From the IMG/VR virus record IMGVR_UViG_3300028177_000001, positions 186,001-250,000 of that record: a stretch of 64,000 nt of DNA; one strand, written 5' to 3'. Positions 52,979 through 60,231 of the stretch are shown here, one piece after another. Position 1 is the first letter of the stretch; each line of letters begins with the position of its first letter. The translations under genes and the position numbers were made by a program. A model generated the notes under the pieces. That model was not told the origin of the DNA, made no database searches, and saw only the letters and a program-made list of their open reading frames with translations.

Positions 52979-53275
52979 TTATGCCAAGGTCACGCAGGAG
53001 TGCGCGGGTCCCGAGCCGCCCTGGATGATGGTGTCCTCAGTGACGAGAACTCCCCCGACCGGGATGCTGTAGCCCAGGTGGGTGTCCGGCATCAGGTACA
53101 TGCCGATAGCTCCGGGGAACATCGCGGAGGACGCGGCCTGTGCCCAGAGCTTCTCATCCGTCTCACGGAAGAGGGGCTCGGAGAGAAAGGCGCGGACTTC
53201 GCAGCGCATGCCCCCTACGGGAGGGAGAACCCACTGGTTGGGTCCGGCCTGTACGACTTGCTGCATGAACGACAT
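52979..53275 (-). pseudogene. rtcB: truncated RtcB RNA ligase (N-terminal ~98 aa only)
   Basis: LMPDTHLGYSIPVGGVL (MPDxHxGYxxPxGG); the expected GxDIxCG is degenerate (GSGPAHSCV) and is followed by a stop; no continuation in other frames. Confidence 0.8.
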
Positions 53276-53286
53276 GGTCGGTCCTT

Positions 53287-53988
53287 CTACTTCAGGGGAA
53301 GGCTTCCGGGGACGCCCTCGGGGAGGGGGAGTAGGATGTGGGTGGGGCGGATCAGAGCCCCACCCTTTGAGAAGACAGAGGAAGTGGCAGGGTCCTGGAG
53401 TGTCCCGTCCGCCCGAGGCGGGAGGACTCCTACCACAGGCCCCAGGCCAGCCTCGACCCGCATCACCGAGCACCACCAGATTGCGGCAGCCACGAGGGGT
53501 GTGATCTTCCCTGTGGCTTCGGCCTGGATGAGCCACGTCATGTCGTAGGGGGGACGCCTCCACCCCTTCTGACACTCCCAGTCAACGCCGTCGCCCAGGC
53601 AGGGCTCCTCCCCGTGAGACCCGTCCTCGTGCGAGGCATAGTAGGTCCCGCTGCCCTTGCAGTAGGAGCACTGCTCTCCCGCCGCCAGCACCCAGTACAG
53701 CCGGGAACGAACCTCCTGGTCCGAGCAGTTGAGGCGGAGGAACACCGGACTGCGATTGTCGTGGCCGACCAGGGTGGACTCCCCGTACCACAGAGCACGA
53801 AGCTCTCCCGCTTCTCGGCGAGTACCGTGGAGGAAGCCGTCTACGCGGAAGGTGAACTCGTCCCCCTGGTGATCCTCATAGGACCAGTCCATCCAGACAG
53901 GCCCGCCTCGCCACCCGTCCAGGACAGCGTTGTTCAGCACGTCGCCCTTCAGGACCAGGTCGCTGGGGGTCAGTTCGCGGTATTCCAT
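53287..53988 (-). CDS. hypothetical protein with CxxCxGxG
   Basis: AGGAAAGG RBS before ATG 53988. Confidence 0.55.
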   Translation of the reverse strand: MEYRELTPSDLVLKGDVLNNAVLDGWRGGPVWMDWSYEDHQGDEFTFRVDGFLHGTRREAGELRALWYGESTLVGHDNRSPVFLRLNCSDQEVRSRLYWVLAAGEQCSYCKGSGTYYASHEDGSHGEEPCLGDGVDWECQKGWRRPPYDMTWLIQAEATGKITPLVAAAIWWCSVMRVEAGLGPVVGVLPPRADGTLQDPATSSVFSKGGALIRPTHILLPLPEGVPGSLPLK

Positions 53989-54005
53989 GGCCTTTCCTGC
54001 GGGTT

Positions 54006-54452
54006 CTACTTGAGTTCGACAGTGGCTCCGGCCACTCGGAGGCCGTCGGCGTAGTCTTGGATGCGTTCCGGAGTCCAGAAGTTCGGGGAACCCGGGACGT
54101 CCAGAGTCATGACGACGGGGCACGCTGTTTCAGAGAGGTACTTGGCCTCCTTCAGTCCTGTTCCTGTGTGGTTTCGGATGCACTTGATGACCTGGATCTT
54201 ATGCCCCAGGGCTGTCATAATCAGCTGGGTAGGACCCAGCTGCGGGAACTCTTCCCCGTCCTCCAGGTACGGCAGGCACGACTCCAACAGGGTGTTGTAG
54301 AGGGTCGCCAGGTTGTGGTCCCGATGCTCCGGGTCGTGGAGTGCTCGGAGCGGCGTGTCCTGAAGATCCATCCGAACCAGGAGCTGCGCCAGGTGGCGCT
54401 TGTTCAAGAGGATCATGTCCCCTGGGAGATCAAAGTCGGCCACGTAGCGCAT
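54006..54452 (-). CDS. protein with C-terminal ribosomal protein bL12 (L7/L12) CTD
   Basis: KIQVIKCIRNHTGTGLKEAKYL ... AGATVELK. Confidence 0.85.
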   Translation of the reverse strand: MRYVADFDLPGDMILLNKRHLAQLLVRMDLQDTPLRALHDPEHRDHNLATLYNTLLESCLPYLEDGEEFPQLGPTQLIMTALGHKIQVIKCIRNHTGTGLKEAKYLSETACPVVMTLDVPGSPNFWTPERIQDYADGLRVAGATVELK

Positions 54453-54619
54453 CCGAGACAGCGGGTTCTACACTGTTACGCCCCGCCCCTGGGTAGGGAA
54501 CCCCTCAGTCCGTCTGGGTCCAGACCATGAACTTGAAGTGTTCAGCCTTTTCCTTCTCGAACTCGGCTCTCTTGGCGGGGTCGCGAGGTTGCCCCGACCC
54601 CGAACCGGGGGGCGGGGCT

Positions 54620-54694
54620 GGCAACCACCAACCGCACGGGATTCGAACCCGTCCGGGTGCTCTACTGAGCGACCATCTCTGGTTGGTGGTTGCC
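54620..54694 (-). ncRNA. 75-nt tRNA-like RNA lacking an anticodon arm (Y-like RNA candidate)
   Basis: Perfect 14-bp terminal stem GGCAACCACCAACC/GGTTGGTGGTTGCC enclosing GCTC-AGTA-GAGC and ACGGG-TTCGAAT-CCCGT. Confidence 0.7.
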
Positions 54695-54710
54695 CCTCTC
54701 GAGACTGTTG

Positions 54711-58650: not shown

Positions 58651-58816
58651 GACTACGCAGGGTCCTCGTGGGCACGCCCGTTCAAGAGAACGTGACCCGC
58701 CTCAGCCAGGGCAGTATCCGCCCACGTCTGCAGAACTCCCCCCGACCTTGCGATCGAGGGGAGTCTGAAGTAATCGACACGCGAGTGGGGCAGCTGGTGA
58801 ACCGCCCCCCGAAGGG

Positions 58817-58890
58817 GGCGGGCATCAGGACTCGAACCTGAAACAACCTGGGTATGAACCGGGGCCTCTATCCAATTGAGGTATGCTTGT
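58817..58890 (-). tRNA. degenerate tRNA with CAU anticodon and a non-pairing acceptor stem
   Basis: D arm CCTC/GAGG, anticodon loop TTCATAC, T arm TCAGG-TTCGAGT-CCTGA; acceptor ACAAGCA/TGCCCGC pairs at only 4 of 7 positions. Confidence 0.65.
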
Positions 58891-59629
58891 AGGCTGTTCC
58901 CGGGAGCGTGTCGAAAGCGTTGTAGGAGGGTAGGGAGATCGGTACGGCCACTCTTGCCCCTGTCAGTAGAGGACCTGGGACCGGGAGCATTGACGCTGCG
59001 GTGCGTCCCTCCCGGCCAGTTTTGACCTTTTCCTATGTGGCAGGCTACGAGCCGGAACCGCTGCTCGTTTTGTCGTCGAAGCCCTTGCGTACCGAAAGCG
59101 TTGAACGAAGAAGATTACCCGTCCTGGTTCGGACGAACCCCCTGACGGGAGAGGGCGTGGCGCAAGTAGTCCAGAGTGCGGATGGCGTCAGCGTCATGCA
59201 TGCGGTCTCGCCGCAGTTGCAACTGCTGAACCTTCTTGCGGTAGAGCCTCAGGGAACCCGCAGACATGCCGCGAAGATCCCCCTCTGTAGCGATCCGAAC
59301 TCGGAAGGGCTTGTCGCACTTCCACCGTGAGTGGGCGACCAGGAACCGACCGCTCTCGTCCTCGTAGACAGTGACGGGCTCGAAGCCTTCTCGGTCCTGG
59401 CGGGAACCCACGTGGTCAGTCCTTGGACGGGGACTCGTCTCGGCTGATGGTCAGCGGGGAGCTGCCGTCGGAGACGTGAGTCACCTCGTAGATGCCGTCG
59501 TTCCTGGGACGAGCCCAGGGCCAGATACGAATCCAGAGGCGACGCCACCAGGGGTCGTTGCCTACGATGGCGATGCGTTGCCCGGCTTTGAAACTCACGG
59601 GGTTCGTCCAGAGGAGGTCAGGAAAAAGG

Positions 59630-59773
59630 CGGGGAAGCACGGATTCGAACCGTAGGCTTGTAAGCTGCGTCCTGGTCTCCCTACACCGAAGCGGAAGGAG
59701 AGAGTGGGACAGCAAGAAGAGTCGTTAGACCCGCATTAACTGTGCGGTGCTCCACCAAGGAGCAATCTTCCCC
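59630..59773 (-). ncRNA. 144-nt tRNA-like RNA (GUU, Asn-like) with a 76-nt variable arm
   Basis: GGGGAAG/CTTCCCC acceptor stem, GCTC/GAGC D stem, CCGCA-CAGTTAA-TGCGG, T arm TACGG-TTCGAAT-CCGTG. Confidence 0.8.
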
Positions 59774-59929
59774 AAAATGTTGAAAGGGGGGTGGCCGATC
59801 CGAAGACCAGTTTAGCAGGCGCGAGCCGAACTACGCTACCACCATCGCGAAGGCCTCGAGCGTGCGGGGGGGACGCTGCTCGAAGCAAGGGGTCTGAACG
59901 TGCGAGCGGGAGAGCTGGGAGTGCTTTGT

Positions 59930-60011
59930 TGGCACGCGGTGTAGGACTCGAACCTACGACCTTCCCACCCCCGAGAGGATGGGACGCTCTAACCAGCTGA
60001 GCTAATCGCGT
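59930..60011 (-). tRNA. tRNA-like gene with encoded CCA but no canonical anticodon loop
   Basis: Canonical D and T arms and variable loop AGGTC; anticodon arm TCCCA-TCCTCTCGGGGG-TGGGA (12-nt loop, or a 9-bp stem with a CTCG loop). Confidence 0.75.
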
Positions 60012-60087
60012 AGTTGCTTGTAGGCTCTGCCCTGAGGCGCGTTCAGAAAGGGGTCCCTGCCCGAGCGGGGCTCGGGCAGGGTGGATG

Positions 60088-60231
60088 AGGGGAAGTCAGG
60101 ATTCGAACCTGAAGCTTGTAAGCTGGTGCCGAGGGCCTCGTCAGCGAACCGACGAGGCGAGGAGCGCAGCTGGGAATCCTTGCGGATCCAGTTCCGTAGA
60201 CTGGTGCCTCTCCCAGGAGGCGGGCTTCCCC
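60088..60231 (-). ncRNA. 144-nt tRNA-like RNA (ACG, Arg-like) with a 75-nt variable arm
   Basis: GGGGAAG/CTTCCCC acceptor stem, GCCTC/GAGGC D stem, CCAGT-CTACGGA-ACTGG, T arm TCAGG-TTCGAAT-CCTGA. Confidence 0.8.

What the first reader, a model, noticed from the sequence alone, without database searches (positions are those of the whole stretch)
52979..60231. Possible RNA-repair/tRNA-decoy island: RtcB remnant, Ro60-like protein, five aberrant tRNA-like RNAs, bL12 domain
Seen within about 7 kb: a truncated rtcB, a bL12-CTD protein, the anticodon-less RNA, the TROVE/VWA gene and the 58.8-60.2 kb aberrant tRNA cluster. A DEDDh exoribonuclease (41100) and an HD hydrolase (47568) lie further away. 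Known: host anticodon nucleases (PrrC, VapC, RloC-type) cleave tRNAs, and phages counter them with tRNAs and RNA ligases. Inference: anticodon-altered or anticodon-less tRNA mimics could act as nuclease decoys or armoured tRNAs, possibly making the ligase dispensable, which would explain its decay.
Basis: inference. Interest (0 to 1): 0.72.

Follow-up and report, generated by a model that had tools for sequence, protein, structure and literature searches.

The report
Phage Ro60-like module with tRNA-shaped RNAs
A giant marine phage carries a distant relative of the RNA-binding Ro60 ring protein next to unusual tRNA-shaped RNAs with a large conserved extra arm; this gene-plus-RNA set recurs in dozens of huge phages and seems undescribed, while the broken RNA ligase and ribosomal-protein fragment beside it are local additions.

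Summary
The window lies in a 288-kb marine jumbo-phage record. It holds a 98-aa N-terminal remnant of RtcB, an ORF ending in a bL12 C-terminal domain, and a 650-aa protein with a TROVE/Ro60-like fold plus a VWA domain. It also holds five aberrant tRNA-like RNAs.

The interpretation changes. Two of the RNAs (60089-60231 and 59631-59773) belong to a family of 125-150-nt tRNA-shaped RNAs. They keep the acceptor, D, anticodon and T arms and carry a ~70-nt structured insertion in the variable region. That insertion has near-invariant CUC and YUACAAGC motifs. Their anticodon loops are not conserved.

A covariance model finds 146 copies, with strong covariation. Forty of 50 related huge-phage loci have copies within 10 kb of the Ro60-like gene (median 3.1 kb), almost always on the same strand. 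The Ro60-like gene is also paired with a conserved ~320-aa partner gene in 51 loci.

The rtcB remnant, the bL12 ORF and the anticodon-less RNA are lineage-specific insertions. Intact RtcB co-occurs with the RNAs in relatives, so "decoys made the ligase dispensable" is not supported.

Most likely this is a Y-RNA-like RNP module. Binding and expression are untested.

The parts
60089..60231 (-). V-arm tRNA-like RNA, copy R2. It has a 7-bp acceptor stem (GGGGAAG/CUUCCCC), a D arm, an anticodon arm (loop CUACGGA) and a ~70-nt variable-region module. That module is a small hairpin, an outer helix, a CUC loop and an inner hairpin, followed by AGCUUACAAGC and then the T arm.
   Evidence: MFE fold, z = -3.4; covariance model R1, 60.9 bits, E 8e-12; ortholog in L003 at 9096-9229
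59930..60026 (-). R3: a tRNA-like RNA with the AGCCUACAAGC motif 4 nt upstream of its 5' end. It has a full cloverleaf and an encoded CCA. The anticodon stem is extended and the loop has 6 nt, so normal decoding is not expected.
   Evidence: ARAGORN calls it 'tRNA-Glu', 82 nt; Rfam tRNA 50.6 bits with an 11-nt insertion in the anticodon loop; the L003 ortholog also has a 6-nt loop
59631..59773 (-). V-arm tRNA-like RNA, copy R4. Same architecture as R2. The anticodon loop is CAGUUAA, with A at position 33 where tRNAs have U.
   Evidence: MFE fold, z = -2.75; model R1, 68.4 bits, E 1.3e-13; ortholog in L003 at 9502-9648
58797..58895 (-). R5: a tRNA body (D arm, anticodon arm with loop UUCAUAC, T arm) without an acceptor stem. 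The AGCCUACAAGC motif takes the place of the 5' strand. Only GCA/UGC can pair, and a GC-rich UUCG hairpin follows directly.
   Evidence: Rfam tRNA 35.9 bits with 3 of 7 acceptor pairs flagged non-standard. The same architecture occurs in L003 and L006, with compensatory changes in the D, anticodon and T stems
54711..56663 (-). Ro60-like protein, 650 aa. It has an extra beta-rich N-terminal ~115 aa, an alpha-helical repeat region and a C-terminal VWA domain whose MIDAS residues are intact and invariant (D443, S445, S447, T506, D533).
   Evidence: Pfam VWA_2; more than 1000 homologs, many on contigs of 100-540 kb; invariant MIDAS residues in alignment A1; AF2 model pLDDT 79; fold matches to Ro60/TROVE proteins
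54620..54694 (-). R1: the anticodon-less tRNA-like RNA. It has a 14-bp perfect terminal stem, a 10-nt bulge, a D arm (GCUC-AGUA-GAGC) and a T arm (ACGGG-UUCGAAU-CCCGU). A hairpin follows at 54591-54619.
   Evidence: weak mascRNA-like Rfam hit, E 0.53; no homolog in any fetched locus or elsewhere in the genome
54006..54452 (-). 148-aa ORF whose C-terminal ~70 aa are a bL12 (L7/L12) C-terminal domain. It is lineage-specific.
   Evidence: Pfam PF00542 E 6e-9; TIGR00855 E 2e-7; no tblastn hit in 56 related loci
52979..53275 (-). rtcB remnant: 98 aa covering residues 1-97 of RtcB. It lacks every downstream active-site element.
50065..51096 (-). Conserved partner gene of the Ro60-like gene (~320-345 aa), outside the finding's coordinates. 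In most relatives it starts 0-100 nt after the Ro60-like gene. It has two N-terminal beta-barrels, a ~60-residue helix and a C-terminal alpha/beta domain. Function unknown.
   Evidence: tblastn hits in 51 of the fetched loci, which include a few duplicate records; alignment A6; AF2 pLDDT 88; no significant fold or family match

Best explanation
The window holds a local elaboration of a module that is conserved across many uncultured huge phages.

The module has three parts, embedded in or next to the phage's tRNA gene array:
(i) a divergent Ro60-like protein (TROVE-like helical repeats plus VWA);
(ii) a conserved ~320-aa partner protein;
(iii) tandem genes for tRNA-shaped non-coding RNAs. These RNAs have a large structured module with invariant CUC and YUACAAGC motifs in the variable region.

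Proposed mechanism, by analogy with bacterial Rsr/YrlA:
- The tRNA-like body (acceptor stem, D-loop GG, T loop) makes the RNAs substrates for host tRNA processing and stabilising enzymes.
- The variable-arm module is the specific platform bound by the Ro60-like ring and/or its partner.
- The resulting RNP acts on RNA during infection, for example by tethering or gating a nuclease, or in tRNA quality control.

What is shown: the anatomy, the covariation, the conservation and the genomic linkage. What is inferred: binding, processing and any downstream activity.

The rtcB remnant, the bL12-CTD ORF and the anticodon-less RNA R1 lie in a lineage-specific insertion between the two conserved protein genes. 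The remnant cannot be a ligase. R1, which starts 16 nt after the Ro60-like stop codon, may be an additional Y-like RNA peculiar to this phage.
For: Protein. The top structural matches are all TROVE-family proteins: Ro60 from Xenopus, Deinococcus, human, worm and mouse, phage phiLo Ro60, and telomerase p80. They cover residues ~118-613. ESM Atlas neighbours include TROVE/Ro60-vWA clusters. The MIDAS residues are invariant.

RNA family. Thirty-nine copies folded independently give the same architecture. The covariance model finds 146 hits in 57 sources. On the resulting alignment, 86.6% of cells are paired, against 52% in shuffles and 38-50% in slid controls. Thirty-one of 32 pairs show double compensatory changes, and all six main helices are supported. 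CUC (96-98%) and ACA.AG (98-99%) are near-invariant. CUC was not used to find the copies.

Not decoders. Only 97 of 135 copies have a 7-nt loop. U33 is present in 65% of those. Thirty-five different triplets occur. Canonical tRNAs with the same anticodons exist elsewhere in the genome.

Linkage. Forty of 50 distinct related loci hold 1-6 copies within 10 kb of the Ro60-like gene. The median nearest distance is 3.1 kb, and 106 of 108 copies are on the same strand. In 12 whole related records of 340-619 kb nearly every strong hit lies within 10 kb of the gene. Three loci with no hit within 10 kb have copies 12-18 kb away. A pattern scan that did not use the protein query recovered strong copies only on records that carry the gene.

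Partner gene. It is adjacent in 51 loci.

Precedent. Ro60 genes, including phage ones, are flanked by tRNA-like Y RNAs (PMC4201824, PMC12135203, PMC7824862).

Lineage-specific parts.
Against: No direct evidence of binding exists, and no expression data: no RNA-seq run held the region.

The Ro60-like assignment rests on fold only (TM 0.3-0.4, about 14% identity). Pfam TROVE does not match.

The RNAs lack both the Y-RNA Ro-binding motif (GNCGAAN0-1G) and the permuted YrlA topology.

The Ro60-like gene sits inside tRNA arrays in most loci. Part of the linkage could therefore mean only that both elements belong to the tRNA region. In this genome five of the seven copies lie 17-30 kb away, among the tRNAs.

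Two records with the gene showed no RNA copy. Both are partial.

The covariation counts come from an alignment fitted to the model.
Confidence: 0.5

Rival explanations
1. The V-arm RNAs are functional non-coding RNAs of the tRNA region. They work with tRNA or translation machinery, such as an aaRS, EF-Tu, the ribosome, modification enzymes or RNase P, and not with the Ro60-like protein. The linkage arises only because both sit in the tRNA array.
For: The Ro60-like gene is embedded in tRNA arrays in most loci. In this genome five of the seven copies lie among tRNAs 17-30 kb from the gene. The acceptor stem, the D-loop GG and the T loop are kept, and some copies encode CCA.
Against: In 12 large genomes the copies form one tight cluster a few kb from the gene. 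They are not scattered through the arrays. They are usually the RNA genes nearest to the two-gene operon. No other conserved neighbour was found.
Confidence: 0.25
2. One reading: the RNAs are decoys or armoured tRNAs that absorb or resist host anticodon nucleases, which made the RtcB ligase dispensable.
For: The RNAs keep the tRNA shape and a stable anticodon stem, while the loops are diverse and often abnormal. Frequent triplets include GUA, GUU and CAU. From general knowledge, these are anticodons of tRNAs attacked by colicin E5-type, PtuAB-type and VapC-type nucleases. The genome carries only an rtcB remnant.
Against: Selection acts on the variable-arm module and its motifs, and not on the anticodon loop. 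Orthologous copies differ in their loops (R4 has CAGUUAA, its L003 ortholog CUAUUAA). The family coexists with intact RtcB in at least six related genomes and is present in five that lack it. The remnant lies in a lineage-specific insertion.
Confidence: 0.12
3. They are decoding tRNAs. Either they have giant variable arms (an extreme type-II tRNA), or the ~70-nt insertion is an intron that is removed.
For: Some copies have canonical loops and type-II-like D arms, for example the Leu(CAA)-like copy at genome 272005-272155. RtcB, a splicing ligase in other systems, occurs in about a third of relatives.
Against: U33 is missing in 35% of the 7-nt loops, and 28% of loops are not 7 nt. Canonical isoacceptors already exist in the genome. 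An intron would not need invariant internal motifs and covarying helices. By inspection of the sequences, the junctions form no bulge-helix-bulge. Most genomes with the RNAs lack RtcB.
Confidence: 0.08
4. They are decaying tRNA pseudogenes, or the YTACAAGC motif is a DNA-level signal (a promoter) inside split genes. There would then be no function at the RNA level.
For: tRNA arrays in phages turn over quickly. TACAAG loosely resembles a -10 element.
Against: There is extensive compensatory covariation in six helices, including acceptor pairs that span the insertion. Conservation holds across phages whose Ro60-like proteins are only 45-55% identical. The motif occurs only in these RNAs, not in front of genes across the genome. 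A start about 7 nt downstream of the motif would remove the 5' strand of the D stem in R5-type copies.
Confidence: 0.04

Closest known systems
Bacterial Rsr (Ro60) with YrlA/YrlB Y RNAs, for example the Salmonella rsr-yrlBA-rtcBA operon and M. smegmatis YrlA (PMC4201824, PMC7790460)
   Same: A Ro60-type ring protein gene is flanked by one or more small RNAs with a tRNA-like domain (D arm, T arm, acceptor-like stem). It is linked to RtcB in some genomes. The tRNA-like part is thought to recruit tRNA enzymes.
   Different: The protein is too divergent for Pfam TROVE and has an extra N-terminal beta domain. The RNAs keep the normal tRNA strand order and an anticodon arm. The specific module sits in the variable region, not in a 5'/3' terminal stem. 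The GNCGAAN0-1G motif is absent. New invariant motifs (CUC, YUACAAGC) are present. There are arrays of up to 6-7 copies and a conserved partner protein.
Thermus phage phiLo Ro60 with Yrl1 and Yrl2 (PMC12135203; PDB 9KOP, 9L5Y)
   Same: A phage-encoded Ro60 homolog has its RNA partners encoded just upstream. The structure is among the fold matches.
   Different: phiLo Ro60 is a recognisable TROVE protein of about 460 aa. Its Yrl RNAs are stem-bulge-stem Y RNAs with a CGAA motif, not cloverleaf-shaped RNAs.
Type-II tRNAs, tRNA-Sec and allo-tRNAs, which have long variable arms (PMC7609411)
   Same: A cloverleaf with an extra helix emerging between the anticodon and T arms. Many copies have a long D stem with a short loop.
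   Different: Known variable arms are simple hairpins of about 10-25 nt without conserved sequence. Here the module is about 60-80 nt with two helices and invariant motifs, and the anticodon loops are not conserved.
Other tRNA mimics: mascRNA, the tmRNA tRNA-like domain, viral tRNA-like structures
   Same: R1 (no anticodon arm) resembles the minimal acceptor/T-arm mimics. It gave a weak mascRNA-like hit (E 0.53).
   Different: None of these families scored significantly. ARAGORN finds no tmRNA in this genome.

Membership tests
Ro60 / TROVE protein family | Sequence match to the TROVE domain (Pfam PF05731) | tested here: not met
   Pfam gives no TROVE hit at E<0.01. Neither the single sequence nor a 23-sequence profile finds any Ro60 chain in PDB. 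None of the 120 listed homologs carries PF05731.
Ro60 / TROVE protein family | Architecture: alpha-helical (HEAT-like) repeat region followed by a C-terminal VWA domain with MIDAS | tested here: met
   The AF2 model has Ro60 and TROVE proteins as its top PDB and Swiss-Prot matches over ~500-560 columns (E 1e-7 to 1e-6). VWA scores Z 15. DxSxS, T and D are invariant. TM is only 0.3-0.4, so ring closure is not established.
Ro60 / TROVE protein family | Binds Y RNA on the outer surface and single-stranded RNA ends in the central hole | not testable with these tools
   Needs biochemistry. No protein-RNA prediction was run.
YrlA-type bacterial Y RNA | Encoded next to the Ro60 gene | tested here: met
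   R1 starts 16 nt after the stop codon. R2-R5 lie 2.1-3.6 kb upstream. The median nearest distance in 40 loci is 3.1 kb.
YrlA-type bacterial Y RNA | A 5'/3' terminal stem carrying the GNCGAAN0-1G Ro-binding motif | tested here: not met
   In R1-R5, CGAA occurs only inside the T loop (GGUUCGAAUCC), by inspection. The family consensus has no such motif.
YrlA-type bacterial Y RNA | tRNA-like domain in permuted order (T arm, closed acceptor-like stem-loop, D arm), with the Ro stem in place of the anticodon arm | tested here: not met
   All copies have the normal order: acceptor 5' strand, D, anticodon, variable arm, T, acceptor 3' strand.
tRNA (Rfam RF00005), functional decoder | A cloverleaf scoring above the gathering threshold, with a 7-nt anticodon loop and U33 | tested here: not met
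   R2 and R4 are not detected even at E up to 10. R3 passes (50.6 bits) but its loop has 6 nt. R5 passes (35.9 bits) but lacks an acceptor stem. Across the family U33 is present in 65% of 7-nt loops, and 28% of loops are not 7 nt.
RtcB RNA ligase | Full ~400-480-aa catalytic domain with Cys, Asp and His metal ligands and the GMP-binding His | tested here: not met
   Only residues 1-97 are present, the Asp before the Cys is replaced, and no further piece exists in the record.
Ribosomal protein bL12 | N-terminal dimerisation/bL10-binding domain, hinge and C-terminal factor-binding domain | tested here: not met
   Only the C-terminal domain matches (residues 77-148; Pfam profile positions 4-67, TIGR00855 positions 61-124 of 125). 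The N-terminal 76 aa are unrelated.

The most novel reading that the evidence does not exclude
Huge phages carry a previously unrecognised ribonucleoprotein system. A divergent Ro60-like ring and a dedicated partner protein assemble on a new class of full-cloverleaf tRNA mimics. A conserved variable-arm module (CUC and YUACAAGC) is the protein handle. The variable anticodon arms give the set of paralogous RNAs different specificities, for example for recognising, protecting or repairing particular tRNAs or tRNA-targeting enzymes during infection.
Probability: 0.3. Interest if true: 0.88.

Novelty: new variant of a known kind. Interest (0 to 1): 0.74.

Why it matters
Pairing of Ro60 with tRNA-like Y RNAs is known in bacteria and a few phages, but what the tRNA mimicry is for remains open.

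Here the same theme appears in a very different form. The RNA is a complete cloverleaf with a new conserved module in the variable arm. It is present in several copies per genome, next to a highly conserved but unannotated gene pair.

The protein family has more than 1000 members in metagenomes and sits on many of the largest phage genomes known. The only GenBank phage record that carries it labels it "conserved hypothetical".

The RNA family is absent from Rfam 15, and no description was found in the searchable literature.

If the RNAs are the protein's partners, this gives a large, diverse natural set for studying how Ro60-type rings read RNA and why they use tRNA shapes. It would also assign a function to a core gene pair of huge phages. 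Finally, it corrects tRNA counts, because two of these RNAs are called as tRNA-Met and tRNA-Glu.

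Tried and rejected
- **Near-identity DNA search.** A search of the region against GenBank phages found no match. A protein-pattern scan with the single protein also found nothing. The alignment-based scan worked.
- **Sequence searches for Ro60.** Pfam, PHROGs, NCBIfam, PADLOC and PDB (single sequence and profile) gave nothing beyond VWA.
- **VIA re-ranking.** It returned only VWA domains for the whole model.
- **MAFFT alignments.** Alignments A2-A4 were too poor for RNAalifold, which recovered only the T arm. I imposed a hand-made structure to seed the covariance model.
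- **Complement of the motif.** A search for a partner complementary to YUACAAGC in the genome found nothing informative.
- **Recent origin from resident tRNAs.** The V-arm RNAs are not close paralogs of any of them.
- **Pattern scan of IMG/VR.** The 14-base pattern matched mostly by chance. Only 5 of 80 loci held model hits.
- **Expression.** No RNA run held the region, and three metatranscriptomes from the same study laid nothing. This is not evidence of absence.
- **Partner protein.** No family and no significant fold match. The best were weak OB-like or Mpa-interdomain similarities, Z 5.5.
- **Complex prediction.** The Ro60-like protein with its partner gave no verdict (score 0.15, mark 0.32). 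This counts neither for nor against binding.
- **Split intein or intein-truncated rtcB.** The fragment's best NCBIfam hit is an intein-containing RtcB model. However, it aligns colinearly with an intein-free RtcB through the catalytic Cys, and no C-terminal part was found. I rejected the idea, with the caveat that about 21% of the genome is missing.
- **HD hydrolase at 47568.** No supporting hit was found.

Full report
**Context.** The window is bases 186001-250000 of a 288,255-bp linear IMG/VR virus record (about 62% GC, CheckV completeness 79%). It is a jumbo phage found in marine metagenomes. ARAGORN finds 43 tRNA genes in the record. Most lie on the minus strand between 244 and 272 kb, so the finding sits at the edge of a large tRNA array. 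Genes in the region are on the minus strand.

**Checking the observation.**

The ORF 52979-53575 matches Pfam RtcB only at profile positions 1-45, and this is the only RtcB signal in the genome. The likely product starts at the ATG at 53275 and has 98 aa (MSFMQQ...). It aligns without gaps, at 51% identity, to residues 1-97 of an intact 468-aa RtcB from a related phage, beginning at the same MSF. It stops four residues after the catalytic Cys. The intact protein has GSGYDISCGVL where this one has GSGPAHSCVTLA-stop, so the metal-binding Asp is lost. A tblastn search with full-length RtcBs finds no other piece. It is therefore a true remnant that cannot ligate.

The ORF 54006-54452 ends in a bL12 C-terminal domain.

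The 650-aa ORF 54711-56663 has a Pfam VWA domain but no TROVE match by sequence. Its AlphaFold model was built from a 23-sequence alignment and has pLDDT 79. Its best PDB matches are Ro60 structures, including the Thermus phage phiLo protein (E about 1e-7 over ~550 columns). Its best Swiss-Prot matches are five Ro60 orthologs and telomerase p80, all TROVE proteins, over residues ~118-613. ESM Atlas neighbours include TROVE/Ro60-vWA clusters. TM-scores are only 0.3-0.4 and there is an extra beta-rich N-terminal domain. I therefore call it Ro60-like, not a Ro60 ortholog. The MIDAS residues are invariant in the family.

The DEDDh exoribonuclease at 41100 is confirmed. The HD hydrolase at 47568 is not.

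**The five RNAs.**

- **R1 (54620-54694).** It begins 16 nt after the Ro60-like stop codon. It has a perfect 14-bp terminal stem, a D arm and a T arm, no anticodon arm, and is followed by a hairpin.
- **R2 (60089-60231) and R4 (59631-59773).** Both are 143 nt. They have a 7-bp acceptor stem, a D arm, an anticodon arm and a T arm. A ~70-nt insertion sits between the anticodon and T arms. It folds into a small hairpin plus a two-helix arm and ends in AGCUUACAAGC just before the T stem. Neither ARAGORN nor Rfam's tRNA model sees them.
- **R3 (59930-60011, called "tRNA-Glu").** It is a cloverleaf with an extended anticodon stem and a 6-nt loop. AGCCUACAAGC lies 4 nt upstream of its 5' end.
- **R5 (58815-58890, called "tRNA-Met").** It has no acceptor stem. 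The same motif takes the place of the 5' strand, and a hairpin follows the T arm.

The motif occurs in the window only at these four places.

**Relatives.**

The Ro60-like protein has more than 1000 homologs, many on contigs of 100-540 kb. None is annotated beyond "hypothetical" or VWA. An alignment-based scan of IMG/VR fetched 56 loci. The only GenBank phage record with the gene, Virus Rctr197k, labels it "conserved hypothetical".

In the closest relative with DNA available (L003, 67% protein identity), the same four RNAs occur in the same order just upstream of the gene. They share the same peculiarities and carry many compensatory substitutions. L005 and L006 also have copies of the R2/R4, R3 and R5 types.

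Within this genome, five more R2-type RNAs lie in the tRNA region.

**The RNA family.**

Thirty-nine copies were found through the motif plus acceptor complementarity. Folded independently, they give the same architecture.

A covariance model seeded from 21 of them finds 146 hits at E<0.01 in 1.1 Mb of related loci. On the resulting alignment:
- 86.6% of cells pair, against 52% in shuffles and 38-50% when partners are slid.
- 31 of 32 pairs show double compensatory changes.
- The acceptor, D, anticodon, outer V, inner V and T helices are each supported. The small first hairpin is optional.

This alignment is fitted to the model, but the independent folds and the slid controls point the same way.

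The near-invariant positions are the D-loop GG, a CUC in the 5' side of the V-arm internal loop, ACA.AG in the tail, and the T loop. CUC was not part of the original search pattern.

The anticodon loop is not conserved:
- 97 of 135 loops have 7 nt.
- U33 is present in only 65% of those.
- 35 different triplets occur.

Canonical tRNAs with the same anticodons exist elsewhere in the genome, and the V-arm RNAs are not close paralogs of them.

These are therefore conserved structured RNAs that mimic tRNA shape but are mostly not decoders.

**Linkage.**

- Forty of 50 distinct related loci hold 1-6 full copies within 10 kb of the Ro60-like gene. The median nearest distance is 3.1 kb, and 106 of 108 copies are on the gene's strand.
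- In 12 whole related records of 340-619 kb, essentially every strong hit lies in one cluster within 10 kb of the gene.
- Three loci without a nearby hit have copies 12-18 kb away. Two partial records have none.
- A pattern scan that did not use the protein query recovered strong copies only on records that carry the gene.

The caveat is that the gene is itself embedded in tRNA arrays in most loci. Some of the linkage may therefore reflect shared membership of the tRNA region.

**The partner gene.** ORF 50065-51156 has homologs immediately downstream of the Ro60-like gene in 51 loci. Its model is confident (pLDDT 88), but no family or fold match is significant.

**The local insertion.** In this phage about 3.5 kb separates the two conserved genes. 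That stretch contains R1, the bL12 ORF, the rtcB remnant and several small ORFs. None of these has a counterpart in the other loci, apart from full-length RtcBs in two loci that match the remnant. These elements are local additions.

**RtcB and the decoy idea.** Intact RtcB is present in 8 of 30 related records, and a ninth has only a C-terminal fragment (6 of the 15 records that are at least 90% complete have a match). The V-arm RNAs occur both in genomes with RtcB and in genomes without it. The inference that the RNAs made the ligase dispensable therefore has no comparative support. The pattern of constraint, on the variable arm and not on the anticodon loop, also does not fit a simple anticodon-nuclease decoy. 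Decoy activity is not excluded.

**Interpretation.** The nearest known system is Rsr/Ro60 with its tRNA-like Y RNAs. YrlA is encoded beside rsr in more than 250 bacteria and phages and is processed by tRNA enzymes (PMC4201824). Salmonella has rsr-yrlBA-rtcBA (PMC7790460). Phage phiLo Ro60 binds two upstream Yrl RNAs (PMC12135203). The present RNAs fail the YrlA membership tests: they lack the GNCGAA motif and have normal rather than permuted topology.

I propose that they work like Y RNAs. The cloverleaf body would give tRNA-like processing and stability. The variable-arm module, with CUC and YUACAAGC, would be the handle for the Ro60-like ring and/or its partner. Anatomy, covariation, conservation and linkage are shown. 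Binding, expression and activity are inferred.

No RNA-seq run holds the region. The protein-protein complex prediction gave no verdict.

**Novelty.** The RNA family has no Rfam 15 match. Five literature searches found no description of it or of this protein family as Ro60-like. The jumbo-phage review notes only that a few phages have TROVE proteins with tRNA-like partners (PMC7824862). I rate it a new variant of a known kind, of considerable interest.

Noticed in passing
window 57394-58650 (+): A 418-aa ORF lies on the opposite strand between R5 and the Ro60-like gene. It contains an HEIGH (HExxH) zinc-metallopeptidase motif. The only other leads are weak (ESM features resembling ATLF/M90 peptidases at 0.85; PADLOC capP E 1.5e-4). 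It has no counterpart in related loci, so it looks like a moron-type insertion.
   Followed up: partly
window 48505-49776 (-): A 423-aa classical AAA+ ATPase (Pfam AAA E 3e-20; PAN/FtsH-like, also IetA-like in PADLOC) lies directly downstream of the partner gene. The same arrangement is seen on the closest relative's contig, but there was no tblastn hit in the other loci.
   Followed up: partly
window 58885-58895, 60016-60026; L003 9260 and 9720; L005 6354 and 6639; L006 9562; L011 8542 and 8912; L047 15081: The YUACAAGC motif also lies 0-4 nt upstream of, or overlapping, the 5' end of otherwise tRNA-like genes. Some of these look like normal tRNAs, for example Thr(CGU) in L005. In R3-type copies a CUC, a hairpin and a ~25-nt spacer precede the motif. 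R2-R3 and R4-R5 may therefore be composite units.
   Followed up: partly
window 58815-58890 and 59930-60011: Automatic tools call these two RNAs tRNA-Met(CAU) and tRNA-Glu(CUC). Both are structurally abnormal (no acceptor stem; 6-nt anticodon loop), so tRNA counts for phages of this kind are probably inflated.
   Followed up: yes
window 59115-59600 (-): About 650 nt with two small ORFs (~60 and 98 aa) lie between R4 and R5. In L003 the two RNAs are only ~70 nt apart. This is a further lineage-specific insertion inside the RNA cluster.
   Followed up: no
window 44011-44727 (-), 43556-44188 (-), 41100-41666 (-): An HNH endonuclease (Pfam E 5e-10), a phage zinc-finger protein and an Rv2179c-like 3'-5' exoribonuclease lie 10-14 kb from the Ro60-like gene. 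No link to the module was shown.
   Followed up: partly
L017 19472-19832: A related 452-kb phage encodes a tmRNA (tag ANDNSIADRLVA) and 47 tRNAs within 10 kb of its Ro60-like gene. No tmRNA was found in the window's genome.
   Followed up: no
genome 20066-20142 (outside the window): ARAGORN reports one more odd tRNA-like gene with a 2-nt 'anticodon', far from the tRNA array.
   Followed up: no
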